Counted from the stretch's first letter, positions 38,376 through 63,890 are shown. The stretch: DNA of 64,000 nucleotides from Ostrea edulis (GCF_947568905.1 NC_079173.1:18414001-18478000), one strand, 5' to 3'. Numbers and translations: made by a program. Notes: a model not told the origin generated them from the sequence alone.

Positions 38376-38986
38376 ATATAAAGTTGGTAGATAGTCTGTG
38401 ATCCTTTTTCAACATTTGAAAGCAAAATTGCAAATACAGAGCTGCCACCCATACATCAGTTTTATTTGAAATTATAGTTTGGAAACTTCCTTTTAGTCAG
38501 TGCGAAATTACAAACCATTTTGCTCATACGCACAAAATGTACCCGAATATCGAATTAGTTGGATACCACACCCAGGTGATAATAAAATATTACTGCATAG
38601 ATATGCACAGGGTAAGATGGAGAAATAATCATTTTCATTTCATTTGTATTTGTTTCAATTAATGTATTTTATACAGTGGAGGAAAATAAAACACCAAAAT
38701 ATGAAACAGATGATCACTGTTCGTTATCTTAACCTTTCATTTGGAAGAATATATGGAGTTTTAATTGAAGTTTACAGGATTATATCATATTAACATATTC
38801 GTGCAAATGATGATTGTTGGATGCATGTAATAGATAAATCATCGTTGATGTACCTAAATGTCATATCTAAAGCCATATTTTGTGCAAACACTTTGTTTCT
38901 GCGTATTGAATCAATATACACAGTAATCGATTTTAATATTGTAGTGTTCATCAATTAAAGTTAATCAGGTAATCTTTCTGATTCAG

Positions 38987-39058
38987 AAACCTGTGGTACA
39001 ATAAGATAACAACGTTGCAGAATGGAATCTTTGATGAGTTGACAAATCTACATACACT
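38987..39058 (+). CDS. LRR exon A (72 nt, phase 2-2)
   Basis: TTTCTGATTCAG|A AAC CTG TGG TAC AAT AAG ATA ACA ACG TTG CAG AAT GGA ATC TTT GAT GAG TTG ACA AAT CTA CAT ACA CT|GTAAAT = NLWYNKITTLQNGIFDELTNLHTL; in frame with exon 1. Confidence 0.88.
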
Positions 39059-39481
39059 GTAAATATTTTGATATAAATACCAATTATTTACAATGCAAGG
39101 GTGAATACAACAGAGAGTAATGAAAATCATAAAAACTTTTAAACAGTATTTCCTGTTTGATAACATAATGTAAATAACATGAAATGTATACTATTTATAT
39201 ACACACTTATTCATGATTCCCTTTAAAAAGTATGAAATGGCAGTGGTTATATATCATTCCATGAATAACATTGATATAGATAATGCACTGGAGGTTATTG
39301 AGAATATATGTAAGTCATGAAATGTTTCTGTTCTCAAATAATGCATACATTTCACATACCTGACACATACATTACAAATCAGACCCGCATTCTAACCACA
39401 TACTATACATATTGTACAAATAAATATGACATATGTACGCATGAGCACTTGTGTTACATATTCGAATATGTATGTCATAAT

Positions 39482-39803
39482 GTTAGTTCCCGAGGGTCTC
39501 TACAGCCCAGTAGCTAAGTACTTCGTTACAAGCTTGAAAATACGGATGTATCTTTAATTGCTGTTATAAAATTTAGAAATTCATTTCAAAATTAGGGATT
39601 ATCTCCCTCATGCCTAGCTGTTATCCTTGGACGAATTTGGCTCCACTTTTTTGGCACGCTGGTTTTCGCTATATTTAGCTCTAAAACTTCATAGTTATTT
39701 CGGATTTCAAACATTTCGGTTGATCATCACTGAAGAGACATCATTTGTCGAAATGCGCATCTGGTGCATCAAAATTGGTACCATATAAGTTTTACTTTAT
39801 GAA
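39482..39803 (+). repeat. Dispersed ~350-bp repeat (family also at 47690 and 48590)
   Basis: CCCGAGGGTCTCTACAGCCCAGTAGCTAAGTACTTCGTTAC...GAAATGCGCATCTGGTGCATCAAAATTGGTACC. Confidence 0.8.
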
Positions 39804-41414
39804 TATATTTACCGTGTTTTTTTGTTTGCTTTCTAAATTTGTTTTCAAACATACATTATATGAATGTTTACAAAAAATGAATAGCATATTACGTCATATG
39901 ATTAAAGGTCTTTGAAATCATCATACAGATAAGAATAAAAGTAACAATGTATAATAATGCTTTCTATATGAATAGAAACCATGAACGTTGAAGATAACGA
40001 ACAATGATGAATCTTATAACAGCTATAAGCAATGCAGATTCTGGAGAGAGATCTGGTAATACGATTGTGAGTCGGCCGACTTTGATGTTGATTTAACAAA
40101 AGTCATACAATAAATTCCTTTTTCTCTGTGGTTGATTTAACAAAGCAATGATTAAACTTTAAAAGTTGTATTCCTGTTTTCGATTACAGTGTCACATTTA
40201 TTTTCACACTTGACCATTAGAGTTACTGAAAACCGTGAAAATAAAATTTCACAGATTCCGATCGTTTAAACTTGTGAAACTTAAGAAATGTAAAAAAAAA
40301 AAGTGAAAAAAAGAAAAGAAAAAAAAATAATTGAAATGTGTTAATTGCAAATATATACTAACTTTAACATTGAAAATGCAGAATACATATTTCTCTTTTC
40401 AAAAAGTTTATTCTGGTTATGTTCAAACGCAATGAATCTTTTTAATCTTGATAAAAGTTGGACACTGTTAAACTTATTATCGACATTAAAAACCACATGA
40501 GGAGTTTGGAGAATATAATATCCATATGTAATATAGAAAATTCTATTTGAAAACTACTTTTAACAATTATCATATGCACATTTTAAGGCTGATTGTTTTT
40601 AAAAGTAAAATTTCATTTCTTAAATAAAGATTGTTCTAGTACAAGACAGGAACGAATACACTTAATCTAATGTTTATTTTGAAGTTTGAATGAAATATAC
40701 CATTCTGATACTTAACTTGGATTTTATCCACACAGTATTTTCCTTGTTTACATGTAAAATTAGAATAATCGAAGTGGTCGCCTTTTCGTCTATAAGACAG
40801 AAAAAAATAACCTGGTTTTGAACTGCATCGACCTCTCTCCCGCCTCTCCCTAACGATTTAGGGTTTGGATATATCGATTAAAGGATTTTCTGAATGTGAA
40901 TTAATTTTTGAAGTCGAAGAAAGTTACCGTCTTGCCAAGAAGAAAGAAATAGTTTGTGTCCATGCTGAAATGTATGCCTGCACAAGGCAATGGATATTTT
41001 GAAATGTCATGCAAATTATCAAAAACCCAAAAGAAGTGAAATTATACATATACAGGGACTGTTAGAGTTAAAGTAGATAATGTGTGTATGTTGTGTTGTT
41101 TACAAAACGATCATTTTTGTGTGTTGATGTGACAAAAATATAATCTAGTGCGTTGTCATGATTTATGATCACTGCTCGTCGCTAATGGACATTGGCTGTG
41201 TTCATTGTGTCACAGGAATACATTCCAAATAAATGATTTGATTCGCAGAATAGGCAAGTTTACACTATGTCCCTGCCGATCAAATCTAATTTGATTTATT
41301 CGTTTGAAATTGATTTTTGTTATTTTATCATCTTAAAAACAATTTGGTTTTGTACATGTATATATTGTTTAAAATTACAAAGGAAAAAGAAATTTTATAA
41401 ATTATTCGATTTTT

Positions 41415-42710
41415 GTATACAGGTAATATGAATGTCCTAAAATCAAATTTTGTGGAAAGAGTTTATTATCGTTGCCATTTACATTGTATTGAAAATTACT
41501 TTTGATGTTGTTGTTTTGATTTTTCAAAAATGTTTTAATTGACTTTAAACTGCATTTAAAATGCTTCACATTATATTGGGCTCACGGCGAGTTTGACCGG
41601 TCGACATGGGATGTTTACTCCTCCTAGGCACCTGATTCCACCTCTGGTGTGTCCAGGAGTCCGTGTTTGCCTAACTATCTATTTTGTGTTGCTTATAGGA
41701 GTTATTAGATTTATCGCTGTTCGTTATCTTCACCTTTCATTCATTTGAACAAAATGAAGTTCTGAGTCCAAAGAGCTACACAGTTTAATATAATGTTAGA
41801 AATAGTTTTTGATATTGTTGTTAGTGTTTTCATTTTTCAAAAATGTTTGAATTGACTTTTCTTCAATAAAATGCATTAGAAATGTGTCATGTTGTTTTCA
41901 GCTGTAAAGAAAGTATTTTTAAGTCCAAAGAGTGAAAAACAAGTTTCGTTTATTTACACCTAAATGCTCTATGTCCAAAAACATTTTAACTTTGAAATAA
42001 ATTCAAACTCTTCTCAAATGAAATGTTCTATGTCCATGTTATGATCAAAATTCAACTGTGTCTGTTAATCATTAACAAAAACTAGTGTTTTATTTTAAAT
42101 GAAATATTACAATAAACTTGTTATGAGGTAGATTTTTGTTATTTAGATGGCAATCCATTAGAAAATACACACCTCTGAACGTTGAAATCATTTCCCCAAA
42201 ATTCGAGACAATGCCTATAGAACATTACCATTGACTAGAATATTGAATATGTCTAAAATTGGTACATCAATTGTGTCTAAAACTGAAGCATGATTTTGAA
42301 GAATTCTATCTTTGGAAAGGGTAGTTGAAGGATAAGTACGCTTACCAAAAGTAGAATTAATGCCAAGTTTGTTTAAAATACAGTTGTAATAATGAGCCTT
42401 AAAAGCAAATAAAATTTTGTTACAAGCTTTTTCAGTTAGAACCAAGACACATTTCTCATGTCAGCTATCTAATTCTTTTATTAATTTTGGTTTACCCGAA
42501 AAAAAAAAATAGATTGTACGTACTTTCGTTTGGATGTGCCTTATGCTGGATTTTGATACTCCTTTTATACTTTTGATCCATTCCGACAAGGTATCAAGAG
42601 ATATGTATTCTATCAAAATGACGAGTTATTCTTAAATCCACGAAATACATTGATGAAAATGCTATCAATATAGTTTAATATTGAGTACATCAAATAGTTT
42701 CAAAGTTTAA
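41415..42710 (+). repeat. Local duplication, copy 2
   Basis: See 36785-38375; lacks ~270 bp of the sense PLE piece present in copy 1. Confidence 0.85.
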
Positions 42711-42939
42711 TGTCCTATAATTTAGTATCGGAGATGTACTTGTTACCTGTCGAAGCTACTCGTACAGGTAAATCGAAGATACTGGTGTGAAGTGAAGTGT
42801 AGCGAAACCCGTCCCCTTATACATTGTATACCATGCGAAACTGATACATAGAACGACAGAATATCAAAGTAATATGGCGGATTATCAGAGAAATATGGCG
42901 GATCTATAGAATTGCACTAGATTTATTAATTCATGACAG

Positions 42940-44045
42940 TTTTTACGGCAAACTGACAATTCAACTGTATGACAAACAGGATGAGTTCACCTTCTCCATC
43001 GTTAACTTCCCCTATTTATGTAACAATATTCTAGTATCACCTGCATATGATGTTCATATCTCTCAACTGAAGCAAAATCTTGTTTTTCGTGTGGTCAATT
43101 AGTACAGCAAGGCAAGGTATTGGCGAACAAGGTGATGGTACAGGGGTTACAACAGTCTCGATTGAAGTGAGCATTTCCCAATTTCTATGGTCGTTATAAC
43201 GATCTAGTTCGTCAATACAACCTATCATTGGGTCATATGCTGTCGGACGTGTTTCATGCCGATTGTTAGGCCGTTCTTGGCACACTTATTTTGACTACGG
43301 ATAACTGTGTTTACCTGATTAGGATATAGGGCTCACGGAGAGTGTGACCCGCTTATATGAGTTATGAGATCGATCATTATTCGTTATCTTCACCTTTCCA
43401 ATAAGGAATACAAAAAAAGGAGTTCGACAAATACGGACCCCTGGATATACCAGAGTTGGGATAAGATGGTTAGAAAGAGTAATCATACCTGTGACCGGTC
43501 ACATCCTTACTGAGTCCTATATCTTGATAATGAAAACAGAATAATGGGTAGTTAGAATCAGTGTGTACAAAACACAATTGATACGAAACACGTCAAACAT
43601 TGTTTGACGCAATGACAGGTTGTATTTGCAAACTAGATCATTATAACGACCATATAAATTGCAAAATGTTAACATTAAACAAGACTGTTGAAATTTTGTA
43701 ACGAGCCCGTCTTGCTTTAAAAAAAAATCATAAAGAGAACAGGGTTTTGCGTTCCGAATCAGTTGAGTAGATATGTACACTATTTACAGTTGATGATGGA
43801 CTAGGTGCTACCTGTAAAGTAGATATGGGAAGTTAATGGAGAAGTTCAAATCATACCTTGTTTCATTAGTTTGCCGATAAGATCTATTTTAAATAAAATA
43901 TCTAAGTACGAAGCAGGTGTAGAGTTGTATGTGGTGTTTTTTATTATTTTTTTTTTGTGGATATATCGAATCGATATATGAATGAAAATGATTTTGTTAA
44001 TAGGTAAAACGTGGTTGATGTATCTAAATGTAAAGTTGATAATCT
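42940..44045. mobile_element. Tail-to-tail PLE RT C-terminal relics (sense 42940-43399, antisense 43400-44045)
   Basis: GKLTIQLYDKQDEFTFSIVNFPYLCNNILVSPAYDVHISQL; the two 3' ends abut at ~43400. Confidence 0.75.
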
Positions 44046-45303
44046 AACAACTATAGTTCTAAGAATTTACTGGTCACTATCACCGATGGACGAATTGACT
44101 GTAACCATATCAAGCTAACACATTAAAAAGTCACAATGTAGATATAAAGAGTTTATTATGTACAATATCTCATAAAGAACATGATCCTAATTCCACAAGT
44201 GTCTATGATCTTGGCTCATTAGCGTAGACCTCTGTGGGTGTGACGGATGTACCCACTCCTGGAGTTTGTTTGCCCTTGTACTATACGATTACTCTCCACA
44301 TCCTGCATACACTGATTATATGAGGATAACTGTAGTAGACCACAGGGAGAGGACCTGTTTTGATACACATCCATAGAATGTAATATATTATTTATACGCT
44401 CTGAGTGGCGTTACATTACACATAAATACACACATAAAATTATCTTATTTGCAGATAACATCCTGGACATGTCTTCTGTTTAAGACAATACATTTATACT
44501 TTTGTCTATTGGAAAGACTCCACAAAGACATTGAAGTTTTACATTGCATTTACAGATATTGGACAAAATCTACTTTATGACTATAATACTGCACCATACA
44601 CTGAACACTTGTTTGAATTAGTACCATTTTGAAACGAATGAAAATCACATGCATGGAATTAAGTTAACACTAAGGAACTCGGTAACTGGATGTTTTAGGA
44701 CAGTTAAAATAACATAAAACAATACACAAGCTGCTGAGTAGTAAATAAAACACCTTACCTCAGAAAAGCTGGATCATATGCTGTATCATGTATACGACAT
44801 GCATAGAATCGGAAAAGGTTTGTTGATCAATATAAACTGATATGCAGAGAAGTATGAAAACGTCAATCCTACTAGACTGCCGTGTCCAAACTGAATTCCG
44901 CACAGGTTGGTTGTTTAAAGTCCAATCAAGTTAGGTTCCAATTAGGGCACAGTAAAAAGAGGTTCCAAAAAGGAGAATTTAATGCGACAGTCACTTTTCA
45001 ACATTGGTTCACGTTATAGGGCAAATTTGATTATAAGGTGTTGCCACCCGTGCATATATTTAAACTTTAAGTTGGTAAATTGTTTTGAGTCAATGCGGAA
45101 TTAGAAACCAAAATTAGCCAAACACTAATGCGCTTGTTTTTCGAAACATTTGAGGAACGTAGATATCATACCCAAGTGATAGTGGGATATTTCTATATAC
45201 ATATAGGAATTTGATGGTGACGGGCCTTAATTTTTCTTAGCTGCCGTAAACCTTATGTGTTCGTTTACCATTAACATCCCAAATCAATAAAAAGAGAGAT
45301 TCA

Positions 45304-48300
45304 ATACAGACAACAATCATAGTATTTTTCTCGAAGTTCTCATGGAAATTCGAAGTATAACAATTTCACACTCTTCTTTTAAGAAAAAAGAAAGAGACAG
45401 GCTTGAAAAAAAATTACTGGAAGAGATTGAAATCATAGAGTCGGACTATAACATTAATTTTAAACTTTTAGAGGAAAAAAAGGTTGAACTTGAAATTGTA
45501 AGGAAGGAAAAATTATAAGGTCACATCATTAGATCGCGGGCTAAATGGGTAGAAGAAGGGGAAAAACCTAGTAAATATTTCTGTTCTTTAGAATCCCGTA
45601 ATTTTTTAAACAAAACTATCAAAAAAGTAGAAACACATAAAGATCAGGTCATATATGACCAAGCGGATAGTCTTCATCATGTCAAAGATTTTTATGAAAC
45701 TCTTTACACATGTAAAGATTCAGATCTCTTAGATATAAATTTGGAAGATATCATAAATGTCTCGGACACCCCTAGGTTAGACAAGACAGCTTCAAACTCT
45801 TTGGATGACAAGATATCTGAAAGTGAAATATATACAGTTCTTAAAAATATGAAAAATAATAAATCACCAGGAAGTGATGGCTCCACCGTAGAATTTTTTA
45901 AATTGTTTTGGAAGGACCTCAAAAACCACATTGTATCAGCTGTTAATCATATTTTTGAGAAAAAGGAAATCCCTTTATCACAAAGACTGGGGATTATTAC
46001 ATGTTTGCCAAAAGATGACAAAGCCAGACAATTTCTGAAAAACTGACGTTCAATTACTCTTCCAAATGTGCTTTATAAACTTATATCGGGGTGTCTCAGT
46101 TATAGAATAAAATCTACCTTAGATTATTTGATATCGGAAACTCAGTCTGGGTTTATAAAAGGCAGGTACATAGGAGAAAACAGTAGGTATGTGTATGATC
46201 TCATGTCTTTCACTGAATCCAGCAACACACCAGGTTTACTTGTACTGATAGATTTTGAATTTTATATATAAGGTTTTAAGTTATTTTGGTTTTGGGGATT
46301 GCATAATTACTTGGATAAAAACCTTAAATACAAATATTAAAACATCTGTATTACAAAGTGGTTTCCAATCAGAGCAATTTGATATATAGAGAGGCTGTAG
46401 ACAAGGCGACCTTATTCCTCCTTATTTATTTATTCTTTGTGCAGAAATTTTAGCTATTCTTGTGAAACAGAATACAGATATCAAAGGTATAATAGTGAAT
46501 GGTAACGAACACAAAATTTCCCAATATGCTGACGACACAACTTTGGCTCTTGATGGTTCACCAAAATCTCTTTTTGCTGCACTTGACACTATAGATTACT
46601 AATCAAGTTTCTCTGGATTAAAAATAAACAGCTCAAAAACAAAAATTGTTTGGATAGGCTCTGAAAAATTCTCTAGTCAAGTATATCACCACACAAGATG
46701 GAAACTAGAGTGGGGATGCACTACTTTCAACTTACTAGGAATAGAATTTTCTGTGGATATGAAAAAAAAATAGTCGATTTAAATTATAATATTCAGATAC
46801 CAAAAATTAAAGCGTTGATACGCCAGTGGAATAGAAGAATACTCACCCCCATTGGTCGAGTCACAGTCACCAAATCACTGATTTTACCTAAGCTAAACCA
46901 TCTGTTTATTACACTACCAAATCCTGATAAAGATATCTTGTCTTTTCTGAATAACTGTTTTTTTTTTAAATTATATGGAATTCAAAGATTGACAAGGTCA
47001 AGAGACAAATTGTCACCTAAGATTACTTAAAAGGTTGCGTGAAAATGGTTGAGGTGAACAATTTTATAATGTCTTTAAAATGTTTTTGGATTAAAACATT
47101 AACAAACAGTCACAAACCATGGGTGGATATTCTTTGGCAGTACATGGCAGTGAGGTGGTAAAAAATGTGATATATTTTGGAGATGAATATATTTATACTA
47201 TTATAAACCATAGCAATGATTTTTGGCGTGATGTTTTTCAATCATGGTTAGCAATGATTCGAGAAATGGATGAAAAGTATTTCATGCAAAAACTCAGTTC
47301 TATTCCAGTATGGCATAACACAAATATGTGTGTTGGTAATAAAGACATTTATGTTAAAACATGGTATCAACATGGTGTGAAAATAATTGGAGACTTTTTA
47401 GATAAATATGGAATTCTTTTATTACTACAAGATTTTTCACAAAAATTTAGACTAGCAAATGTATGTACAATGCAATACAACAGTATTACCAGTACTATAT
47501 CTAAGTTTTTAAAGACTTTGTCTGTAAAGAGATCAGATGTTAAAGAAAATTGTATACCATTTATTCCTTTTTACTTTGAATTTATACTGTTGAATGATAA
47601 ATGTTCCAGAGTGTTATATGATATGATAAGTAGTAATGATCTCATACCCAAATCAATTCAAAAATGGAACACTGAATTATCTGTCCACTTGATTGGCACG
47701 CTGTTTTTGGCTATATTTAGATCTAAAACTTTCGGTTGAGTATCACTTAAGAGACATTATTTGTCGAAATGCGCATCTGGTGCGTCAAAATTGGTACCGT
47801 ACAAGTTTTACATTTAGAAGGCAATGTTTCTGTCAAAGAGCTGTTTAAAGTTTGTTTTAAAACAAGTACTGATACCCAAGTTCAGTGGTTGCAGTACCGA
47901 ATTCTTTACCAGCTTCTTCCTACGAAATATTACCCCAAGAAAATCAGTATAATTTCAAATGACTGTTGTTCGTTTTGTAAAGAAAATGTAGAAACAATGC
48001 AACATATCTTTATGTCTTGTTCTTATACTTTAGCACTGTGGAATAATCTTTCCATGCATATTTTCAGAAAAAAAACATAAAAAAGAATTGGTTTTAATGT
48101 TAGTAATGTTATTTTGGGTGAAACACCTCTCAGTTTGTGTAATAAAGTTGTTAATTTCATAATTATGTATACCAAACAATATGTTTTCAATTGTTCAAAA
48201 CAAAACAAAATTCCTCATATCACTGGGCTGATATATTATCTTTCTTTCAAATACAAAGTTGAAAATTTTGTAGCAATTAAATCATGTGAAGTTTTGAAAT

Positions 48301-48487: not shown

Positions 48488-48589
48488 AAAAAGAGAGATT
48501 CAGATATAAATCACAGATAGAGGAGTGTGTTAAAAATTATGTAATGCTTTTAGATCGAGTTGACTGGGTACTTTCTGATCAATATAAAA

Positions 48590-49057
48590 CGTATACGGTA
48601 CCAATTAAATATACATCCGTATTTTTAAGCTAATAGCGAAGTACTTAAATACTGGGCTGTATAGAACCTCGGGGACTAACAGTCCACCAGCAGAGGCCTC
48701 GACCCAGGGGTCATAATGTAAAATTTATACGGTACCAATTTTGATGCACCAGATGCGCATTTCGACAAATAATGTCTCTCCAGTGATGATACTCAACTGA
48801 AATGTTTGAAATCCGAAATAACAATGAAGTTTTAGAGCTATTATAGCCAAAAACAGCGTGCCCAAAAAGTGGAGTCAAATTCGTCTAAGGATAAGAGCTA
48901 TGCATGAGGGAGATAATCCTTAATTTTGAAATGAATTTCTAAATTTTATAACAGCAATTAAATATGCTTCCGTATTTTCAAACTAGTAACGAAGTACTTA
49001 GCTACTGGGCTGTAGAGACCCTCGGGGACTAACAGTCCACCAGCAGAGGCCTCGACC
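48590..49057 (-). repeat. ~350-bp repeat family, ~1.3 tandem units
   Basis: 48603-48715 is repeated at 48956-49057 (offset 353 bp); reverse complement of 39482-39803. Confidence 0.8.
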
Positions 49058-49227
49058 AAATGGAAAATATAATTTTTAGAATATAGACAAGCCATTCATG
49101 ATAGATTTAAACTACTTGTTTACTGCAAATAGCATGCATTTGCGTATTGAATCATTTTAGAAAATTATATATTTCATCCTTTGAGCGTTGATCAATTAAG
49201 ATTAATCAGGAAATATTTTTCATTCAG

Positions 49228-49299
49228 AAACTTGGGTAACAATGACATAACAACGTTACCAAATGGAATCTTTGATGCATTGACGAAGCTACAGAAACT
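49228..49299 (+). CDS. LRR exon B (72 nt, phase 2-2)
   Basis: TTTTCATTCAG|A AAC TTG GGT AAC AAT GAC ATA ACA ACG TTA CCA AAT GGA ATC TTT GAT GCA TTG ACG AAG CTA CAG AAA CT|GTAAGT = NLGNNDITTLPNGIFDALTKLQKL. Confidence 0.92.
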
Positions 49300-49344
49300 G
49301 TAAGTATATATGTATACATAACAATTATTTGTATGCAGAGGAAT

Positions 49345-49990
49345 TGAAGAAAATAGACAATGTTGAACAGTGTTGAATCTTATATCTGCATGTATTATAA
49401 GCAATGTAAAATTAAGAATTGGAGAAACATGGACCCCTGGGTAAACCAGACATGGGAACAGGTGTTTAAGAAGGGTAAGCATTCCCTATTGACCGACTAA
49501 GTATCCCCTGTCGACCGGTCACATCCACCATGAGCCCTATAATCGGAGTGATCCGTAGTCAACGTTAATGTGTAAAGAATGGCCTAACAATTAGTATGGA
49601 ACATATTAGACATAATTTGACTCAACGACAGGTTGTACTGGTAAGTTAGATCGTTGTAACGAGCATATATTTTGCGAAATGTTGACTTTAATCGAGACTG
49701 TTGAGACTCCTGCAATATAAACTTTTTTTTGAGGATTTTGCCTCGATTAAAAAAAAATATCATAAGCATAGCAATTCAGGCACATACATACCTAATAAAA
49801 GTGATAATTGAATACTGCTAAATAGATATAAATCAAGGTTAACGATGGAGAAGCTGAAGTCATCGTGTTTTTCATCAGGTTGAGTGCCTAGTTTCCTTTT
49901 AAAATGTATGTTCAATAACATTTCTAAGTACGATACAGAAATAGAAGGCTATATGGTTTCTTTTATTTCGACTTCACAATATATCGAAAT
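49345..49990 (-). mobile_element. PLE 3'/RT C-terminal relic
   Basis: ORF 49584..49769(-): LQESQQSRLKSTFRKIYARYNDLTYQYNLSLSQIMSNMFHTNC. Confidence 0.75.
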
Positions 49991-50668
49991 GACTATTTGA
50001 AGGCCAGGAAAGATGTTATTTGTCATGTAGAATCCTTTGAATAAATTCTACTTCATGAGAATATAAAACAGATCAGCTAACAAAGGAGCATAATTCGTGT
50101 CCATTTGAATTCTAACAGACCGTTAGAAGACCTGGTCACCAAAGACTACGGATATATATTTTTAGTGAGAACATCCAACATCTTTTTAAAATCAACTTCA
50201 GAGTACGTGTTTGCCTAGTCAGGGTGCTGTTGAACAAAATGATTTCTTGATTGACTGATCAATAGAGATTAATATTTCTCTTTTCCATACGATATGTGTA
50301 ACAAAATAAAATCAATATCGATGTTTTACATCACACAGAGGATGCTTACTCTTCCTAGGCACCTTATTCCACCTCTGGTGTGTCCAGGGTCCGTGTTTGC
50401 CCAACTGTCTATTTTGTATTGCTTTGGTAGGTCAAATTTTAAAACAATTCTCTATACAATGTATCCCAGACTGTGCATCTTTTTTTTCTCCATTATATTC
50501 CCCCAACAGAGTTTGGGAACACACTGTTTTACTCTGTTTCTTCTTATTATTATTATCATTATTATTATGTTCCCGAACTAAGTTTGGGAACATTTTTTAC
50601 TCTGTTTCTTATTATTATCACACAAAGTTTTGGAACATATTGTTTTTACTCTCTTTCTTATTAAGGTC

Positions 50669-52245: not shown

Positions 52246-52277
<32 letters not shown>

Positions 52278-52805: not shown

Positions 52806-53070
52806 ATTGGGTCCAATGCTGTCTGACGTGTTTCATGCCGACTGTTAGGCCGTTCTTGGCACACTGTTTTTGACTACGGATAATTCCGTTTACCTGATCA
52901 AGATATAGGGCTCACGGTGGGTGTGACCGATCGACAGGGGGTAGTTACTCTTCCTATGCACCCGATCCCACCTCTGGTATATCCAGGGATCCGTGTTTGC
53001 CCAACTCTCTGCTTTGTATTGCTTATAGGAGTTATGAGATTGATCACTTTTCGTTGTCTTCGCCTTTCAT
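52806..53070 (+). mobile_element. PLE 3' fragment
   Basis: TGCTGTCTGACGTGTTTCATGCCGACTGTTAG...TTTCGTTGTCTTCGCCTTTCA. Confidence 0.75.
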
Positions 53071-53521
53071 TCTTTGTTATTTTGAGGCGGTGCTCAATTG
53101 CAATCCAAATAGATCATAAGCAAAAATTGCGCTAATGAAATGAATCAACTGAGAGACACAGGTACGGTAAATAGGTGATAATTAAATATCGCTACATAGA
53201 TATAGGAACTGATGATAGAGAACGTGAAAATATCCCATTTGCCATAAAGGATATCAGTTCAATTACCATCAACGTCTCCGTTCTGTAAAGAAGAAATATC
53301 TAAATATAGAATAACATCTCTGTGGTGTTTTATTTTGGAATTCACTGGGTTATTTTCTATTCAATATATGTATGAAAATTATATTTGTTAGAAAATAAAT
53401 AAATGGTGGCCGATGGACCTAATTCCCATGTTTAAAGCCATACTTATGCGCTCGTGTATTAAATCAGTTTACAGAATAATATATTTCATCATTGTAGTGT
53501 TGATCAATGAAACTTAATTAG

Positions 53522-53576
53522 TACATAAAACGTTAAAGAATGGAATCATCGGTACACTGACGAAACTATGGATATT
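53522..53576 (+). pseudogene. Degenerate LRR cassette exon (acceptor and 5' part deleted)
   Basis: GTGTTGATCAATGAAACTTAATTAG-TACATAAA ACG TTA AAG AAT GGA ATC ATC GGT ACA CTG ACG AAA CTA TGG ATA TT|GTAAGG = TLKNGIIGTLTKLWIL; only 55 nt from the nearest AG, so not frame-preserving. Confidence 0.75.
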
Positions 53577-54035
53577 GTAAGGATATCTATATAGATACCG
53601 ATTATTTGTATGACAATTAAATATTGTCGATGAGAGTAATTGTACGAAAAGTGTTAATTTGAAATTGGTCTTGATTTGTGTTACTTTACCCAATGAAAGG
53701 TGAAAACAAAGAACAGTGATATATCTTATAATGAATGATGCAAAATTATTTCAGTTGCTCATACAAATTCAATTGTCCGAAGAAATTATTCTATCTGATC
53801 TCTCATAAAATTGATCACTGTCCGTTATCCTCGCCCTTCAATGTTTCAGATGTTATTTTGAGGCAGTGCAAATTTACAATCCAAATTGATCAGAAGAAAA
53901 AACAAATGCACTAGTAAAATGAATCAGTTGGAATACATCGGTACGATAACTACGTGATGATGGAATATCGCTACATAGATATTTGAACTAATGATGGATA
54001 ACCTGGAATTATCCCATTTGCCATAAAATGTAAGT

Positions 54036-54790
54036 AAGGTGAAGATAACGAACAGTGATCAATTTCATAACTCCTATAAGCAATACAAAATAGATAGTTG
54101 GGCAAACACGGACTCCTGGACACACCGGAGGTGAGATCAGGTGCCTAGGAGGAGTACGCATCCACTGTTGACCGGTCACACCCGCCGTGAGCCCTATATC
54201 CTGATCAGGTAAACGGAGTTATCCGCAGTCAAAATCAGTGTGCCAAGAACGGCTTAACAATCAGTATGAAACACGTCAGACAGCATTTGACCCAATGCCA
54301 GGTTGTACTGACGAACTAGATCGTTATAACGACCATAGAATTTGCAAAATGCTGACTTCAATCGAGACTGTTGAAATCCCTGTACCATCAACTTGCTTGT
54401 CAGTAGCTTAACTCGATTTAAAAACTGACTATACGCAGAACAAGCTATTGCATATCGAATCAGTTGAGATATATAAACACCATATGCAGGTGATAATGGA
54501 ATATTGCTACATAAATATGGGAAGATGACGATGGAGAAGCAGAAATCATCCCGTTTGTCATACAGTTGAGTTGTCAGTTTCCCGTTAATGTTTACTTTCA
54601 ATAAAATATCTAAGTATGAAACAGAAGTGGACGACTCTGTGGTGTCCTTTATTTCCAGCTTACAGGGAGATATCAAATCGACATATGAATGAAAGCTATC
54701 ATTGCTAATAAACAAAACGTCATCGATATATCTAAAAGTCGAATTGAAGGTCACAGCGAGAGATTTTTTCTTCTCAAATAAAAGTTTTTG
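54036..54790 (-). mobile_element. Well-preserved PLE RT 3' half (open frame through YIDD to the stop)
   Basis: IQKLLFEKKKSLAVTFNSTFRYIDDVL...SYLDILLKVNINGKLTTQLYDKRDDF...QLIRYAIACS...YNDLVRQYNLALGQMLSDVFHTDC* within ORF 54254..54955. Confidence 0.9.
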
Positions 54791-55071
54791 AATTAATTGA
54801 ATAAATATAAGTTCATTTACCATTAACTTCTCCATTCTGTAAATAAAAAGATCTAAATATAAAACAACATCTCTGTGTTCTTTTATTTTGGAGTTGACCT
54901 GGTTATTTCTATTGAATATATGTATAGAAATTATATTTGTTAGAAAATACATCAACCTTGGTTGATGGATCTAATTCCCATATTTAAATTCATACTTATG
55001 CGCTCGTGCATTAAATCAGTGTACCGAATAATATATTTCATCATTATAGTGTTGATCAATTAAGCTTAATA

Positions 55072-57269: not shown

Positions 57270-58578
57270 CTGTTCAATATCTGTCGTCTGTCCGTCTGTC
57301 TGTAATTTTTTTTATATTTTCGATTTCTGCTCCAGAACCCTGTAATCAATTTCAACCAAACACGGCCAAAAGCATCCTTGGGTAAAGGGATTTCAGGTTT
57401 GTGCAAATGAAGGGTCATGTCCCTTTGAAAGGGGAAATAATTACAATTAATGGGGTCATTTAAAAATCTTCTCCTCAAGAACCACTGGGCCAGAAAAACT
57501 GAAATTTACGAATTCACGTGAAAATTTCCTGATATAGTGCAGATTTAAGTCTGTTAAAATCATGCCCCGGCGGTTGGATCGGACCACAATAAGGGATCAA
57601 AATTTTACATAGAAATATATAGAAAAAAATCTTTCATAATCCTCTTCTCAAGAACCACTGAGACAGAAAAGATGACATTTACGTGAAAGCATCCTAAGAT
57701 AGTGCAGATTCAAGTCCGTTAAAATCATGGCCCCGGGAGTTGGATGAGTTCACAATAGGGATCAAAGTTTTACATACAAATATGTAGCAAAAATCTTTAA
57801 AAATCTTCTCAAGAACCACTGAGCTAGACAAATTGATATTTACGTGAACGCCTCCTGAAATAATGCAGATTCAAATTTGTTAAAAGTATGCTCCCTGGGT
57901 TGGATGGGGCCACAATGGGCGATCAAAGTTTTACATACACTGTACAAATATATAGGGAAAATCTTTTAAAATATTCTTCTCAAGGAACCACTGACCCAGA
58001 ACAGCTGATATTTACATGAGAGTTTCCTAACACAGTGCAGATTCAAATTTGTAAAAATAATGGCCCTGGAGCGAGGACAGGGCCACAAGGGGGGATCAAA
58101 CTTTTACATAGAAATATATAGGGAAAATTGTTTGAAATCTTCTAAAAAACTACTGGGCCAAAAAATGGAAATTGACATAAAAGCTTTCTGAAATAGTGCA
58201 TATTGGAGTTTGTTAAAACAATGGCCCTCGAGGATAGGATGGACCACATTAGGAAATCAACGTTTTGCATAGGGGAAATCTTTAAAAATCTTCTTTAAAA
58301 ACTACTGGTCCAGTAAAGTTGAAATTTACGAGAAACCTTCCTGACATAGTGCAGATTTAATGTTATCAAAATCATGGCCCCCGGGTGTAAGATGAGGCGA
58401 CAATAGGAGGATCAAACTTTTACATACAAATATATGGGGATAATCATTTAAAAAATCTGAAAAATCACTGGCCTAGAACAGTTTACATTCACATGAAAGC
58501 TTCCTGACAGTCCAGATTCAATAAAAATTGGCCCGCAGGAGTAGTTTGGGGCCATAATAGGGATCAAACTTTTACATG

Positions 58579-58580
<2 letters not shown>
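57270..58580 (+). repeat. Cg170/HindIII-type ~165-bp satellite array (~7 monomers) in a HINE-like element
   Basis: GTCTGTCCGTCTG leader, then repeating AAGAACCACTG...AAAATCATGGCCCC...GGGATCAAAGTTTTACAT at ~57480, 57650, 57810, 57985, 58150, 58300, 58465. Confidence 0.85.

Positions 58581-58582
<2 letters not shown>

Positions 58583-58636
<54 letters not shown>
58583..58636. repeat. (TA)n microsatellite
   Basis: Direct reading. Confidence 0.95.
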
Positions 58637-58641
<5 letters not shown>

Positions 58642-58821
58642 TTCGTCATCCTTGATTACTGCTATATTTTACATCACATAATTTCATTGTTTAGATTGAA
58701 ATTGGTCACTGTTTGTTTCTTCACTTTTTCACACTCTAATCGTTATATCTAGCATAATGAAAGAATAGTGAATGAACCTCCATCATAAAAGAGCTGATAT
58801 ATCGAAAATTGCATATTAATG

Positions 58822-59420
58822 AAAGGTGAATATAACGAAAAGTGACCAATCTTACAACTCATACACACAATACAAAATAGAGAGTTGGGCAAACACAGAC
58901 CCCTGGATATACCGGATGTGGGACTTGGAGCCTTGAATTAGTAAGCATCCCCTATTGACCGGTCACCTCCGCCGTGAGCCCTATATCTTGATCAGGTAAA
59001 CGATGTTATCCGTAGTCAACATCAGTGTACCAAGAACGGCCTAACAATCAATATGAAACATGTCAGACATCATTTGACACAACTGTAGGTTGTATTTGCA
59101 AACTAGATCGTTATAACGACGATAGAAGTTGACTTTAAACGAGGCATTGTCAGTAGCCTGATTCAATTCAAAAACTAACCATACACAGTATAAGCTCTTG
59201 TGTATTGAATCAGTCGAGATATAAAATGACCATACGCAGGTTTTAATGAAATATTGTTACATCAATATGGGTTGACGATGGAGAAGTTGAAATAATCCCG
59301 TTTGTCGTAAAATCGAGCTGTTGGTTTGCCGTTAATATCCACTTTTAATAAAATATCTAAGTATGGCGCAGGAGCGGACGACTCTGTGGTGTCTTTATTT
59401 CGAGTTCACTCGGATATATC
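58822..59420 (-). mobile_element. PLE 3'/RT C-terminal relic
   Basis: TGAAAGGTGAATATAACG terminus through ACTCTGTGGTGTCTTTATTTCGAGTTCACT (reverse of ELEIKDTTES). Confidence 0.8.
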
Positions 59421-61157
59421 GCTTTTTCTTTTGGTTATCTTAAAAATCATTGCAAACTTTCAAATAGGTTCTATTACAAACGTTAATCTAATCAGAAATT
59501 GATATTAAAAAAAAACTTATTCTAAAGACTCCTCAAATGCGGATGTCATACTAAAGTCACTGAAAAACATAAGGAAAGTAGATTACAAGAAACGCAGCGT
59601 AGTTTACCAGATTATCATTTAGCAATTAAATACTAAAACTAATGAATATTTAGATGAGTAATTGAAGATAAATTCTCTTATTGTCTTTAAAACACCTTTA
59701 CTACCTCTAATGATGTCATTTATTACCTGAATTCCTTATCCAACAACATGACAACATTTCAAGCAATACAGAGTACGTTATAACCATCAAACATCAGACC
59801 CTTTTACTCTGTTACTTTAAACGCACACTTTGTCGTTGCTTTTCCTTTTTAAAATTTATTTCCAATTCTGTCATGATTAATGGGTTCAGAGACTTCGTTA
59901 TTTGCTTTAATTTGTGAAACTCGTAGCTCATCAGGATTACTTGACAATTTAAACAAGGTTCGCGCTCCTGGTAATGTTTCTGTCTTCCGTGCAAAAAAGT
60001 AATGAAAACTTCATCGTCGTTTTCGTCAACTTTAAGAAACAAATCTATGATTATCGTAGCAAGTAGAAACGTACTGACCCACATTAACTCCATGGACGGT
60101 CTTCAGTCATTAAAAACATGGCTATGCTCTTCATGTGCAGTTTTTCTATTCCGATGTCACAATGTATTTGCATTGCTCCTATCACTGGGGCAAATAGTTC
60201 CGCTAATCCATCTCAATTACTAGTAGTTGCACAATCTTCAGCATTTACAAACACATAATTAAAACGTGTGTGATATCGATAATTCAACGCATGTTGGACG
60301 GTTATCGCCCCCTGTTGTATAATGAGAAGAACTCTTCTATAAAACTCGGTTTACATTGGCAACGGTCGTCGTGTGATTATTTAGTATGTTGTTTTCTGTA
60401 CGATTTAGGGCATCTCAAGAAGTTATTGCATATTGTTTATATTTCAGTGCTATTTTTACACGATTTATTGTAAAGAGGTTCGGGGAAATTTGTATGATGG
60501 TCGTATGAAAATTGTTAGATTATCGAATACTTTTATAATAGCCCATGTGCGATCTCCCAAAGTCGTTCGAGAGCTCTGAAAAGTCCTTTGAATGCCCCAC
60601 GACACTACACTATTTGTAAAATTAATTGTTTGCACAACAAACTTAAATTACAGTACGTTTAATGTCCGATTAGCAACGTTCGTTCGTGCAATGAGTGTGT
60701 GGAAGTCGTACAATACAATATACAACATGTACACGGGGTGCGCGATTCTCTGGTGCAATCCCAGTTACTGTGTCATTGCAAGGAAGCAGCATAGCAAGGT
60801 AGATATGATATCCACACAAATTAAAACTAAAAATTAGCAGTATCTATTTAAGAAATGAACATCACTTTTTAGCTGTACATAAAATGTAATACATGTATAT
60901 TATGTATACGCACAGAGTGGCGTTACATTACACGTAAATACACACACAACATTAGCTTATTTCCAGATAATATCCTGGATATACCTTCTGTTAAGAATAT
61001 ACATTTATACTTTTGTCAATTGGAAAGGCTCTGTATACCTTTTACTCCACAATCACATAGAAGTTTTACATTGCATTGTTATGCATTTACACATGTGGGA
61101 CAAAGTTTACTTGATGACTACAATGCCGCACCATACAGTGAACACTTGATTCAATTA

Positions 61158-62069
61158 CCGTATATCAGGGTTTTTCCTCGTGTATCTATTTTCCGCTTTG
61201 TTCGCGACGATTTCTGAATCGCGGAGAATAAATCCTAGTAAATTTGAGTCAAAGTTTTGTTTTTGTAGTAGAGTTATATAGCATAAGGTAATAGTGCGGT
61301 GAAAGTTCTGTGTTCAGTTCCCCCTATATCTGATAATCGCCAAGTAACAGGTGTGTACGCTTCGGTGTTTATATTCAAAATATGACAATCTATTGAAATG
61401 GGCCACGTTCTTTGCTTCAATCAATATATAATTATACCTGAGCTACTCATACATGTAACAGTGCATGGTTTATCGTTTCAAACTGAAAATAATTATCGAT
61501 ATATATTTTGTATGAGTATTATTATAGTTAACGAACAATAATTTATGTTACTATACCGGCAAATTGTGCATATTTACAATACATTTGAGTGTAAACGAAA
61601 GTGTACAATTCTTTTTGAAAACTGGTTCGCAGCACAGGAGGGTGATCCCCGGAGCGCGTCTTTAAAAATTGACGAGGTGTGGTTCGATTTATTTCTCACC
61701 TGGATCAAGCCACTTGGAGCAAAATGGCTGACAAAGTTCTATGATTACGTGCAAACAAAACTCGAAATGGTCCGAGATGGATTCAGAGAAATAGGAATAT
61801 CATCCATATTCAGATTTGATTATAATTGCGACAGTAACTACGAAATCTTGTAAATCGTTTCATTGACTGAATTTTACATAAACAATTACGAGTTATAGGT
61901 AAAAATGCTGGCTTCTCCCCTCAACTCCTTTATAAGTTTAAATAATCGTGAATTATTTTTTCGCTATAACTTTGAAATAATGAATATTTCATTCGCGTAG
62001 ATTTGATATACTGTTTTAGGTTCTGAACTCGCGGGAAAAATATGACGCGGAAAAAAACCTGATATACAG
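61158..62069 (+). mobile_element. Internally deleted pogo-like Tc1/mariner element with TA target-site duplication
   Basis: TA(61156-57)-CCGTATATCAGGGTTTTT ... AAAAAAACCTGATATACAG-TA(62070-71); internal DLFLTWIKPLGAKWLTKFYDY...VRDGFREIGI resembles a pogo/DDE_1 C-terminus; empty site with a single TA at 44619-20 in the paralogous unit. Confidence 0.85.
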
Positions 62070-63074
62070 TAGTGTCATTTTGATACTAATGAAAATCACA
62101 TGTATGAAATTAAGTTAACACAAAGGAACTCCGTAACTAGATGTTTTATGACTTTTAAAATAACAAAACAATATACAAATGGCTGAGTAGTAAATAAAAC
62201 ACCTTGCCTCAGAGAAGCTGGATTATATGCAGCTTTACATATATGTCATGTATAGAAATGGGGAAAGTTTGCTGAATAATATAAACTGTTATACAGAGAA
62301 GTATAAAAGCGTCCTTTCTGCTAGACTGCCGTGTCCAAATTGAATTCAGCACCGACTGGCGGTTTAAAGTCCAGTGAAGTGAGGTTCCAATTAGGGCACA
62401 ATAAAAAAGGCTCCAAACAGAATTTGAGGTGTGTTATATACACAGAATAAGAGAATAGTATTTACATTACATACAAAATGAGAATATGGGGAATTTAACT
62501 TAACATTCATTTTTCAATATCGGTTCAGATTTTAAAGTAAATTGCATATAAGTATGTTTCCACCTGTTCATTTATACAAACTATAAGTTGGGAATTTCTT
62601 TTGAGTCAATGAGAAATTAAAAAGCTAAATCAATAATACACAGATGCGCTTGTCTATCGAATCATTTGGGTGACGCAGATATCATACACATGTGATAGTG
62701 AACTATTTTTACATACATATAGGAAGTTGATGGTGACGGACCTTATTTTTTTTCTTAGCTGCCATAAAACTTATGTGTTCGTTTACCATTAACGTCCCAA
62801 ATCAATAAGAATGAAATTCAAATATAAAACACAGATAGAGAATTCTGTGATGTTTTTATTTCGAGTTGACTGGATAATTTCTGATCAACACGTTTAAAAC
62901 AAAATATAATTATTAGATAATTGACTAACCGTTTGTGATGGATTGAAATTACTTGTTTAAAACCAAATTTAGTGCAAAATATGCTGTCGCAGATTGGATC
63001 AGTCTAGAAAATGATTTATTTCTTCATTTGAGCGTTGATCGATTAAGGTTAATCAGGAAATATTTTTGATTCAG

Positions 63075-63146
63075 ATCCTTGTGGGGAAATAAAATAGCAA
63101 CGTTACCAAATGGAATTTTTAATGCATTGACGAAGCTAGAGACACT
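63075..63146 (+). CDS. LRR exon C (72 nt, phase 2-2)
   Basis: TTTTTGATTCAG|A TCC TTG TGG GGA AAT AAA ATA GCA ACG TTA CCA AAT GGA ATT TTT AAT GCA TTG ACG AAG CTA GAG ACA CT|GTAAGT = SLWGNKIATLPNGIFNALTKLETL. Confidence 0.92.
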
Positions 63147-63189
63147 GTAAGTATATCTATATACATAATTATTATTTGTATGCAGAGGA

Positions 63190-63890
63190 GGTGAAGATAA
63201 TGAACAATGTGAAACAGTGATGAATCTTATATCTATTATAAGCAATACGAAATTAAGAGTTGGACAAACATGGACCCCTGGGTAAACCAGACATGGGAAC
63301 AGGTGTTCAAGAAAAGTAAGGATCCCCTGTCGACCGGTCACATCTATCATGGGCCCTCCAGTCAACACCAGTGTGTAAAGAATGACCTATCAATTAGTAT
63401 GAAACACATTAGACATAACTTGACTCAATAGCAGGTTGTATTGGTAATTTAGATCGTTATAATGAGCATATAATTCGCAAAATGGTCTCCTTAAACGAGA
63501 CTGTTGCATGTCCTGTAATATCAACTTGCAATTGTTTGTCAGAAACCTGCCTTAATAAAACAGATCATAAGGAGAACAAGGTTTTGGGTATCGAATCAGT
63601 TGAGATAGTAAACATCATATATAGGTTACAATGGAATACTGCTACATGTTATGTAGATATTGGAAGCTGATGGAGAAGCTAAAATAGTTTGGTGTGTCGT
63701 TAGTTTGTCGTAAAGATTTATTTTCAATAAAATAACTAAGTACAAAGCATTTGTAGATGTATATGTTGCGGGTTTTTTATTTGAAGTTCATGTGGAAATA
63801 TCCAATCCACATAGGATTGAAAATGATTTTGTTAATAGGTAAAAGGGTGTTGGTATCTCTATAGGTAGAGTTGAAGGACTAGCAACTGTA
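63190..63890 (-). mobile_element. PLE 3'/RT C-terminal relic (paralogous to 49345-49990)
   Basis: Shares ACATGGACCCCTGGGTAAACCAGACATGGGAACAGGTGTT with 49428-49467. Confidence 0.75.

What the first reader, a model, noticed from the sequence alone, without database searches (positions are those of the whole stretch)
38750..63890. LRR exons are sandwiched between same-orientation PLE relics: a built-in substrate for one-exon gain or loss
Seen: cassettes A, B, C and 53522 share a common flank design. It runs: old antisense PLE RT sequence (reverse of ...YVDSIYPSELEIKDT..., at ~38760-38800, ~48555-48585, ~53315-53370, ~62845-62885), a shared intron block (GTTGATCAATTAAG.TTAATCAGG...ATTCAG), the exon, a shared GTAA.TATAT...ATTATTTGTATG-like block, then an antisense PLE 3' end (clear in B and C, degenerate in A and 53522). 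In B and C the upstream and downstream PLE pieces cover overlapping parts of the RT C-terminus in the same orientation. Inference: unequal crossover between these repeats would duplicate or delete one frame-preserving LRR exon, so retroelement debris could drive receptor diversification. PLE-mediated transduction of the exon is an alternative.
Basis: partly seen in the sequence, partly recalled or inferred. Interest (0 to 1): 0.78.

Follow-up and report, generated by a model that had tools for sequence, protein, structure and literature searches.

The report
LRR exon array carrying retroelement relics
In this oyster-like genome, each small exon coding one leucine-rich repeat does sit between two old antisense fragments of a Naiad-type Penelope-like retroelement, but that is because one exon-plus-intron unit holding both fragments was copied many times, not because the fragments recombine with each other.

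Summary
Exons A (38987-39058), B (49228-49299), C (63075-63146) and the decayed copy at about 53529 share one flank design. An antisense retroelement relic (U) lies upstream, then a shared intron block, the 72-nt exon, about 47 shared nt, and a second antisense relic (D). Both come from a Naiad-type Penelope-like element (PLE) with an N-terminal GIY-YIG nuclease. They overlap by about 290 nt of the reverse transcriptase C-terminus.

The window is the 5' edge of a very large array. I found 23 cassettes in 284 kb and 122 exon-motif hits genome-wide. Nearly all lie in two inverted clusters on one chromosome.

The repeat unit is about 1.44 kb. U and D have the same truncation points in every canonical unit, so each inserted once and was then copied with the exon.

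The proposed U-by-D crossover is not supported:
- U and D form separate clades with no hybrids.
- They were already about 0.2 substitutions per site apart when copying began.
- They now share exact runs of at most 27 nt, against up to 168 nt between whole units.
- Every exon-loss junction I mapped lies outside the U/D overlap.

Dispersal by retrotransposition is also unsupported. One recombinant junction inside a PLE relic does exist, in the D relic beside exon B.

Earlier first-reader notes of this scan (s1-271497, s1-274733, s1-279174) describe similar arrays elsewhere in this genome.

The parts
38413..38830 (-). Spacer plus U relic of cassette A (old antisense Naiad RT C-terminus, residues ~768-861)
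   Evidence: Aligns to reference unit R positions 894-1085; tblastn E 4e-8 and 8e-5
38868..38986 (+). Shared intron block with acceptor, cassette A
   Evidence: Aligns to R 1391-1506; alignment A1
38987..39058 (+). LRR exon A: 72 nt, AG/GT, NLWYNKITTLQNGIFDELTNLHT
39059..39107 (+). Post-exon shared block of A. Homology to other units stops where D would begin, and no D relic is detectable
   Evidence: R 73-120 aligned; PLE test z 0.7
43397..44078 (-). Orphan canonical D relic (element nt 3336->2661). Its exon and the 3' end of D were replaced by sense-oriented PLE pieces at 42942-43396
   Evidence: falls in the canonical D clade
44989..45304 (-). Spacer and 3' part of B's U relic (R 871-1253), split from the rest by an insertion carrying a LINE-like ORF
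   Evidence: the ORFs at 45741-48080 look LINE-like by eye but had no Pfam match
48495..48582 (-).
   Evidence: Aligns to C's U at 62813-62888, z 22
49059..49227 (+). Shared intron block with acceptor, cassette B (a SINE-like insert lies just upstream at ~48590-49050)
49228..49299 (+). LRR exon B: 72 nt, AG/GT, NLGNNDITTLPNGIFDALTKLQK
49365..50286 (-). B-type D relic (element nt 3358->2372). It is a chimera: the 3' part shares descent with canonical D, the 5' part comes from another Naiad lineage
53107..53400 (-). U relic of the decayed cassette psi (residues 768-862)
53529..53577 (+). Exon remnant psi: the 3' ~49 nt only; acceptor and 5' part removed by a small deletion
53810..54027 (-). 3' part of the U relic of exon-less unit X, separated from its 5' part by a young Naiad insertion
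   Evidence: 53810-54027 aligns to 53039-53248 at 78%; falls in the U clade
54029..54798 (-). Young 5'-truncated Naiad copy (element nt 2610-3379, 95% to a full-length copy), inserted into U of unit X
   Evidence: open frame at 54254-54955
54805..55070 (-). 5' part of U plus the intron block of unit X. It ends in a (TAA)n run before the acceptor; the exon is lost. Only the U part carries the - strand label
58819..59420 (-). Antisense Naiad 3' fragment of another, younger lineage (78% to the reference copy); not canonical D
62511..62952 (-). Spacer plus U relic of cassette C (residues 764-851)
62953..63074 (+). Shared intron block with acceptor, cassette C
63075..63146 (+). LRR exon C: 72 nt, AG/GT, SLWGNKIATLPNGIFNALTKLET
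63213..63877 (-). Canonical D relic of cassette C (element nt 3357->2658)

Best explanation
The stretch is the 5' edge of a megabase-scale tandem array of single-repeat LRR exons.

The ancestral repeat unit is about 1.44 kb. It holds one 72-nt exon of symmetric phase plus one intron. About 1.0 kb of that ~1.37-kb intron comes from two old, 5'-truncated, antisense relics of Naiad-type Penelope-like elements.
- D starts about 47 nt after the splice donor and covers element nt 3377->2658, followed by a 36-nt tail.
- A ~120-nt spacer follows.
- U covers element nt 2981->2688 and ends about 140 nt before the next acceptor.

Each relic inserted once, before the canonical units multiplied. DNA-level tandem and segmental duplication then copied exon and intron together. 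Every exon therefore inherits U from the intron before it and D from the intron after it. The sandwich is a product of the amplification, not its engine.

Later changes in exon number came from three sources: exchange or conversion between whole units, small deletions, and new transposon insertions.

Shown here: the unit anatomy, the shared truncation points, the separate U and D lineages, and the junction positions. Inferred: that the copying was by unequal crossing-over or segmental duplication, and that the intron was only about 190 nt long before the PLE insertions.
For: 1. PLE identity. [quoted passage not shown] No hammerhead ribozyme was found by Rfam. The genome search gave 73,542 candidate matches. 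This fits the Naiad description in PMC8557442.

2. Constant geometry. D starts 66-68 nt after the exon end and spans element nt 2658-3358 in at least 12 units. U (nt 2880-2964 core) lies ~430 nt upstream of at least 10 exons. Compact units have periods of 1220-1506 nt. The same unit is present in the second, inverted cluster (L001).

3. Lineages. In the tree of 66 relic segments, all U pieces and all canonical D pieces form separate, well supported clades (97/95 and 98/93). Copies from both clusters fall inside each clade.

4. Co-duplication. Nearest neighbours are the same across U, block, exon, post-exon, D 3' half and D 5' half for most units, for example 65954 with 104470, 67174 with 105824 and 98068 with 129017. 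Blocks of 24-35 kb repeat at 91-96% identity.

5. Confinement. Exon-motif matches number 122 against 0 for the control, and 120 of them lie at C10 18.46-19.29 Mb (+) or 26.28-27.53 Mb (-). The top 40 cassette matches are all in those two clusters.
Against: - A tandem array is cyclic, so the original duplication breakpoints cannot be read from it. A role for the relics in the very first duplication cannot be excluded.
- The chimeric D of B-type units shows that exchange inside PLE sequence has happened at least once.
- Cassette A has U but no detectable D. D may therefore have arrived after the first duplications, which complicates the 'one ancestral unit' picture.
- There is no RNA evidence that the exons are spliced together.
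Confidence: 0.75

Rival explanations
1. One reading: the upstream and downstream relics of one exon pair out of register and cross over, adding or deleting exactly that exon. This process built and still reshapes the array.
For: U and D are direct repeats in the same orientation, overlap over element nt 2688-2981 and flank a frame-preserving exon. Weak homology is detectable: 71% over 87 nt within the reference unit and z 12.
Against: - No U/D hybrid appears among 66 relic segments, and the U and D stems are ~0.21 substitutions per site apart.
- The longest exact run between U and D is 5-27 nt.
- The canonical intron keeps complete D plus spacer plus complete U, not the single hybrid this crossover predicts.
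- The 995-bp units in the second cluster are a deletion of R 490-877, not a hybrid.
- Exon-loss junctions lie in the intron block, in non-PLE 'extra' sequence or at a new PLE insertion.
Confidence: 0.06
2. PLE machinery copied the unit. Either the exon with its flanks was host DNA framed by PLE terminal repeats and mobilised in trans, or it was carried by read-through from D and inserted head to tail.
For: Penelope elements can move intron-containing host DNA framed by pseudo-LTRs, possibly including an LRR gene (PMC3846280). Naiad and Chlamys elements form partial tandems and multicopy head-to-tail insertions (PMC8557442). In element orientation, U-spacer-D resembles a partial tandem.
Against: - Copies are not dispersed: 120 of 122 lie in two clusters on one chromosome.
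- U lacks the PLE 3' terminus (it stops at nt 2981), which is the part expected to act in cis.
- U and D belong to different lineages, so they are not two copies from one template.
- Repeats of 24-35 kb at 91-96% identity point to DNA-level duplication.
Confidence: 0.07
3. PLE debris matters indirectly. By stretching a ~190-nt intron to ~1.37 kb, the relics raised the homology per unit about five-fold and made unit-by-unit unequal exchange efficient. Exchange between D and unrelated Naiad copies set the boundaries of the larger repeat blocks. This is compatible with the best explanation.
For: - D, tail and U make up about 1.0 kb of the 1.44-kb unit.
- The longest exact runs between units are up to 168 nt.
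- The identity of B-type D to canonical D drops from ~0.84 (nt above 3040) to ~0.63 (nt 2700-3000). That is below either one's identity to a modern copy, and there is no indel in element coordinates.
- B-type units start each higher-order block.
Against: - Mosaic switches between units also occur at the block/exon boundary and just after the exon, not only in PLE sequence.
- There is only one PLE-internal junction, and its resolution is about 60 nt.
- No comparison was made with LRR exon arrays that lack PLE relics.
Confidence: 0.3

Closest known systems
Naiad clade of Penelope-like elements (N-terminal GIY-YIG endonuclease plus RT; Craig et al. 2021, PMC8557442)
   Same: [quoted passage not shown] Copies are heavily 5'-truncated, occur as adjacent direct and inverted fragments, and include very short 3'-terminal pieces. 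No canonical hammerhead ribozyme was found. The genome search returned tens of thousands of candidate matches.
   Different: U and D are old, dead relics at 67-79% identity to modern copies. No clade-level phylogeny or CxC-motif check was done here.
Repeat-mediated exon duplication or deletion by non-allelic homologous recombination (for example Alu-Alu events in human genes)
   Same: Same-orientation retroelement fragments flank an exon whose length preserves the reading frame.
   Different: Here the two flanking relics are too diverged to be the preferred substrate, and no recombinant between them is seen. The whole 1.44-kb unit is the better one.
Penelope-mediated mobilisation of intron-containing host genes in Adineta vaga (Arkhipova et al. 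2013, PMC3846280)
   Same: Host coding sequence lies between direct PLE-derived repeats, and an LRR gene was one of the candidate cases in that paper.
   Different: The copies here are tandem and confined to two clusters. The upstream repeat lacks the PLE 3' terminus. No target-site duplications were found or tested.
Tandem arrays of single-LRR exons or cassettes in immune-type receptors (lamprey VLR cassettes; one-repeat-per-exon LRR genes)
   Same: Many 24-residue LRR modules, with variation concentrated at the x positions of LxxLxLxxN.
   Different: These modules carry splice sites and look like ordinary exons. There is no evidence of somatic assembly, and expression was not shown.

Membership tests
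Naiad-type Penelope-like element | GIY-YIG endonuclease at the N-terminus, RT at the C-terminus, in one ORF | tested here: met
   L012:1709-4462 (minus strand), 917 aa: GIY-YIG at residues 47-137 (E 1.2e-5, above the Pfam cut-off); RVT_1 at 655-767 (E 1.7e-4, below the cut-off)
Naiad-type Penelope-like element | No canonical hammerhead ribozyme in the terminal repeats | tested here: met
   Rfam gathering scan of the whole window found nothing, although the window holds more than 35 fragments of the element
Naiad-type Penelope-like element | Frequent 5' truncation, partial tandems or inverted adjacent copies, high copy number | tested here: met
   Most fragments end at element nt ~3372-3379 and start at varied points. 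An inverted pair lies at 42942-44039. The genome search gave 73,542 candidates.
Naiad-type Penelope-like element | CxC linker motif and placement inside the Naiad clade in an RT phylogeny | not tested
   No clade reference sequences were fetched
Exon gain or loss by recombination between the flanking relics (U x D) | Direct repeats with alignable homology on both sides of the exon | tested here: met
   Overlap at element nt 2688-2981, same orientation, but only 14-124 nt align at 68-93%
Exon gain or loss by recombination between the flanking relics (U x D) | Recombinant (hybrid) relic at the junction of gained or lost units | tested here: not met
   No hybrid among 66 segments; four mapped exon-loss junctions lie elsewhere; the 995-bp units are a simple deletion
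Exon gain or loss by recombination between the flanking relics (U x D) | Copy-number differences between haplotypes with junctions in PLE homology | not testable with these tools
   Only short contigs of low-coverage runs were available; the joints reported had sides of ~20 nt inside repeats
Retrotransposon-mediated transduction or mobilisation of an exon | Copies at unlinked sites | tested here: not met
   120 of 122 motif matches lie in two clusters on one chromosome
Retrotransposon-mediated transduction or mobilisation of an exon | Target-site duplications around the mobilised unit | not tested

The most novel reading that the evidence does not exclude
An old Naiad insertion turned a short intron of an LRR gene into a long, repeat-rich one, and this triggered runaway unit-by-unit unequal exchange. 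The result is more than 120 cassette exons in two inverted megabase clusters. Exchange between PLE relics of different origin (as in the chimeric D next to B-type exons) would set the limits of the larger repeat blocks.
Probability: 0.15. Interest if true: 0.65.

Novelty: new member of a known kind. Interest (0 to 1): 0.33.

Why it matters
The result separates cause from consequence. Transposon relics around duplicated exons look like recombination substrates, but here they are passengers of a copied unit. That is a useful caution for reading similar arrays, several of which this scan has flagged in the same genome.

The array itself may matter more than the relics:
- It holds well over a hundred single-repeat LRR exons.
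- Variation is concentrated at the ligand-facing positions.
- The exons lie in two inverted clusters about 7 Mb apart.

It is a candidate for a fast-evolving recognition gene family in a bivalve. The two inverted clusters are also a possible substrate for a large inversion.

Tried and rejected
- First idea, that U and D are two halves of one relic split by later insertions: rejected. They overlap in element coordinates (nt 2688-2981 against 2658-3377) and sit together in compact introns.
- The ~995-bp units in the second cluster as the predicted D/U hybrids: rejected. They join R 489 to R 878, which is a plain 388-nt deletion.
- The psi/X pair as a D-free 'empty site': inconclusive. A 20-nt trace of D's 3' end remains after psi.
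- The intron block or spacer as hidden PLE sequence, or as copies of each other: no signal (z 0.8 or less, apart from the colinear weak hits that extend U).
- RNA and population data: one run search found no run on record as RNA. Laying four runs on L004:1-6000 gave only 100-270-nt contigs. Depth peaked on a young PLE tail, nothing lay on the exons in the possible RNA run, and the joints had ~20-nt sides inside repeats. This is uninformative in either direction.
- Pfam on short TE ORFs in the window gave nothing.
Single exons of 24 residues are too short for the protein searches.
- Known flat-oyster inversions are on C2, C5 and C8, not on this chromosome.


Full report
**Coordinates and reference.** The window is C10:18,414,001-18,478,000 (+) of an 895-Mb genome. 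Earlier notes of this scan call it a flat oyster. I joined the window to 220 kb fetched downstream (L004, L005, L014-L033). In that 284-kb string, position x equals C10 18,414,000 + x, so positions up to 64,000 are window coordinates.

The reference unit R is string 99,493-101,070 (L015:5493-7070). 'Element nt' counts along a full-length retroelement copy taken from L012 with 400 nt of upstream flank: the ORF is nt 401-3154 and the 3' end is at nt ~3377.

**The observation.** There are three intact 72-nt exons on the + strand: 38987-39058, 49228-49299 and 63075-63146.
- Each has AG/GT splice sites.
- Each has one base before and two bases after 23 whole codons, so any number of these exons keeps the reading frame.
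- Each codes a classic 24-residue LRR.

The copy near 53522 keeps only its 3' ~49 nt. A small deletion removed the acceptor and the 5' part.

All four share an intron block upstream and about 47 nt downstream.

The upstream relic, which I call U, matches the RT C-terminus on the minus strand in A, psi (the decayed exon at ~53529) and C, with E values from 4e-8 to 3e-7.

The downstream relic, D, is clear in B and C. After psi only a 20-nt trace remains. Next to A nothing is detectable, and homology to other units stops at about the point where D would begin.

U covers element nt 2688-2981 and D covers nt 2658-3377.

**What the retroelement is.** The open frame at 54254-54955 (minus strand) has no Pfam match. 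In the genome search it gave 73,542 candidate matches, the best at 90-93% identity. [quoted passage not shown]

Rfam finds no hammerhead ribozyme in the window. These are the traits of the Naiad clade of Penelope-like elements (PLEs), which also shows heavy 5' truncation, partial tandems, inverted neighbours and short 'tails' (PMC8557442). I did not do a clade-level phylogeny.

**The wider setting.** The cassette is not local to this window.
- A search with cassette B gave 348 candidates. The 40 that were scored are all on C10, at 18.46-19.23 Mb (+) and 26.27-27.52 Mb (-), at 86-100% identity.
- A degenerate pattern for TLPNGIFDxLT gave 122 matches against 0 for the reversed control. All but two fall in those two clusters.
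- In the 284 kb examined there are 23 cassettes. They form larger repeat blocks of 24-35 kb at 91-96% identity. Then comes a 105-kb stretch without cassettes, after which cassettes resume.

The window is therefore the 5' edge of a very large array.

**Anatomy of the repeat unit.** Compact units have periods of 1220-1506 nt. In R the order is:

| R positions | Part |
|---|---|
| 1-72 | exon |
| 73-~119 | shared post-exon block |
| ~119-841 | D (element nt 3377->2658) |
| 842-877 | 36-nt tail after D's 5' end |
| 878-996 | spacer with no PLE signal |
| 997-~1365 | U (element nt 2981->2688) |
| 1366-1506 | intron block with the acceptor |
| 1507-1578 | next exon |

R also carries a 58-nt young PLE tail at 1085-1143 that most units lack.

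The blast-detected part of D begins 66-68 nt after the exon end and spans element nt 2658-3358 in at least 12 units. The U core (nt 2880-2964) sits about 430 nt before at least 10 exons. The same unit is present in the inverted cluster (L001).

Identical truncation points in many units mean one insertion each, made before the units multiplied. Without D, tail, spacer and U, the intron would be about 190 nt. That last figure is inference.

**Test of the proposed crossover.**

1. *Lineages.* I built a maximum-likelihood tree of the shared segment (element nt 2860-2985) from 66 copies, including young and sense-oriented ones.
   - All U pieces fall in one clade (support 97/95 for 22 rows, 84/80 for all 26).
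   - All canonical D pieces fall in another (98/93).
   - Members of both clusters sit inside each clade.
   - Three rows that my position rule labelled D are in fact the U of the exon-less unit X.
   - There is no hybrid.
   - The path between the two crown nodes is about 0.21 substitutions per site. The two relics were therefore already only about 80% alike when the canonical units began to multiply.
2. *Present-day substrate.* U and D flanking the same exon align over 14-124 nt with exact runs of 5-27 nt. Whole units align over 1.1-1.5 kb at 80-96%, with a median exact run of 39 nt and a maximum of 168 nt.
3. *Predicted product.* A U-by-D crossover would leave a single hybrid relic in the new intron. 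The canonical intron instead holds complete D, spacer and complete U.
4. *The short units.* The ~995-bp units of the second cluster join R 489 to R 878. That is a plain deletion, not a hybrid.

**Where exons were actually lost.**
- Psi lost its acceptor and 5' part by a small deletion.
- Unit X (53810-55070) stops in a (TAA)n run inside the intron block.
- At string 64,484 and 132,816, R 1446 (about 60 nt before the acceptor) is joined to non-PLE sequence about 105 nt beyond D's tail. The paralogous block keeps a 1,042-nt segment there holding the exon and D.
- At 43397, and in its four paralogous copies, the exon and D's 3' end are replaced by a sense-oriented Naiad fragment lying head to head with D.
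- Other units carry point changes at splice sites: AA acceptors at 99,493 and 130,437, a TT donor at 98,068, and an AT donor at 129,017, whose alignment also shifts near its 3' end.

None of these junctions lies in the U/D overlap.

**Exchange between units.** For most units the nearest relative is the same across U, block, exon, post-exon block and both halves of D, so they were copied whole. Some are mosaics. Unit 100,999 matches 105,824 and 67,174 at 94-100% from -310 to -61. Its exon and post-exon block then match other units best: 117,508 for the exon, and 63,075 and 117,508 among the canonical units just after it. Its D matches a copy 800 kb away. The switches fall at the block/exon boundary and just after the exon.

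**One junction inside PLE sequence.** The D next to B-type exons (49365-50286 and its copies) is about 84% identical to canonical D from the exon out to element nt ~3040. From nt 3000 to 2700 it is only about 63% identical. That is lower than either one's identity to a modern copy (0.70 and 0.77), and there is no indel in element coordinates.

In the tree these copies form their own clade (100/99), outside both U and canonical D. One of the two D types is therefore a recombinant or conversion product with a third Naiad copy. PLE homology has thus been used at least once, though not between U and D.

**Transduction alternative.** Penelope elements can move intron-containing host DNA framed by their terminal repeats (PMC3846280). 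Here, however:
- the copies are confined to two clusters;
- U lacks the element's 3' end;
- U and D are of different lineages;
- the larger repeat blocks point to DNA-level duplication.

**Are the exons functional?** All 29 full-length exon copies examined are open. 27 have an AG acceptor and 25 a GT donor. The exons are no better conserved than their flanks: mean pairwise identity is 0.81, against 0.81 for the intron block and 0.85 for the post-exon block. Variation is concentrated at residues 1, 3, 4, 6, 22 and 23, while the scaffold residues are almost invariant. This fits diversifying change on the ligand-facing strand together with recent copying.

No RNA evidence was available. No run on record as RNA was found, and the laid contigs were too short to be informative.

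**Verdict.**
- The description is right, with one correction: A has no detectable downstream relic.
- The sandwich is an inherited property of a 1.44-kb unit that was amplified as a whole.
- The proposed crossover between the two relics and the transduction alternative are both unsupported.
- A weaker form of the idea remains open: PLE debris supplies most of the homology between units, and it has served once as an exchange site.

Similar arrays elsewhere in this genome were flagged by first readers of this scan (s1-271497, s1-274733, s1-279174). I did not examine them.

Noticed in passing
C10:18.46-19.29 Mb (+) and C10:26.28-27.53 Mb (-): The LRR cassette family fills two megabase-scale clusters in opposite orientation about 7 Mb apart on one chromosome. 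Inverted arrays of this size could mediate a large inversion. The published flat-oyster inversions are on C2, C5 and C8, not here.
   Followed up: partly
window 38987-63146 and 26 further exon copies in L001-L005, L014-L033: Variation among exon copies is concentrated at residues 1, 3, 4, 6, 22 and 23 (the x positions of the LRR beta-strand). The scaffold is nearly invariant, also at silent sites. The first 40 nt of the exon are more diverged than the adjoining intron.
   Followed up: partly
window 27109-27202: A further decayed cassette about 12 kb upstream of exon A: an intron block with acceptor and the first ~50 nt of an LRR exon (ELSYDSVTTLKNGVYD), then unrelated sequence.
   Followed up: no
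window 57459-58600 and 7113-7789: A tandem repeat of ~160-170 bp units (about 6-7 copies, 61-80% alike), with a related block 50 kb upstream. It gave no Rfam match.
   Followed up: no
window 8523-10313: A 1.8-kb array of short tandem repeats at ~80% identity in every register.
   Followed up: no
window 39481-39802 and 48711-49034: Two copies of a ~320-bp SINE-like element in opposite orientation, 92% identical. The second sits inside B's upstream relic, about 180 nt before the exon.
   Followed up: no
string 64120-64187 (L004:120-187), 100576-100643, 132452-132519: A 68-nt piece of the Naiad 3' terminus, 96-97% identical to modern copies, sits at the same spot inside U in three units. Similar tiny 3'-terminal pieces are scattered through the window (13867-13901, 30009-80, 39981-40036).
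   Followed up: partly
string 68048-69036, 101875-103886, 106679-107674: In the longer units, 1-2 kb of unidentified 'extra' sequence lies between D's tail (R ~880) and the spacer (R ~871), with about 10 nt of R repeated on both sides. It may be an old insertion with a target-site duplication.
   Followed up: no
window 37216-38377 and 41573-42711: A 1.16-kb segmental duplication (86% identity) just upstream of cassette A. It contains an antisense Naiad RT fragment (element nt 1653-1990).
   Followed up: no
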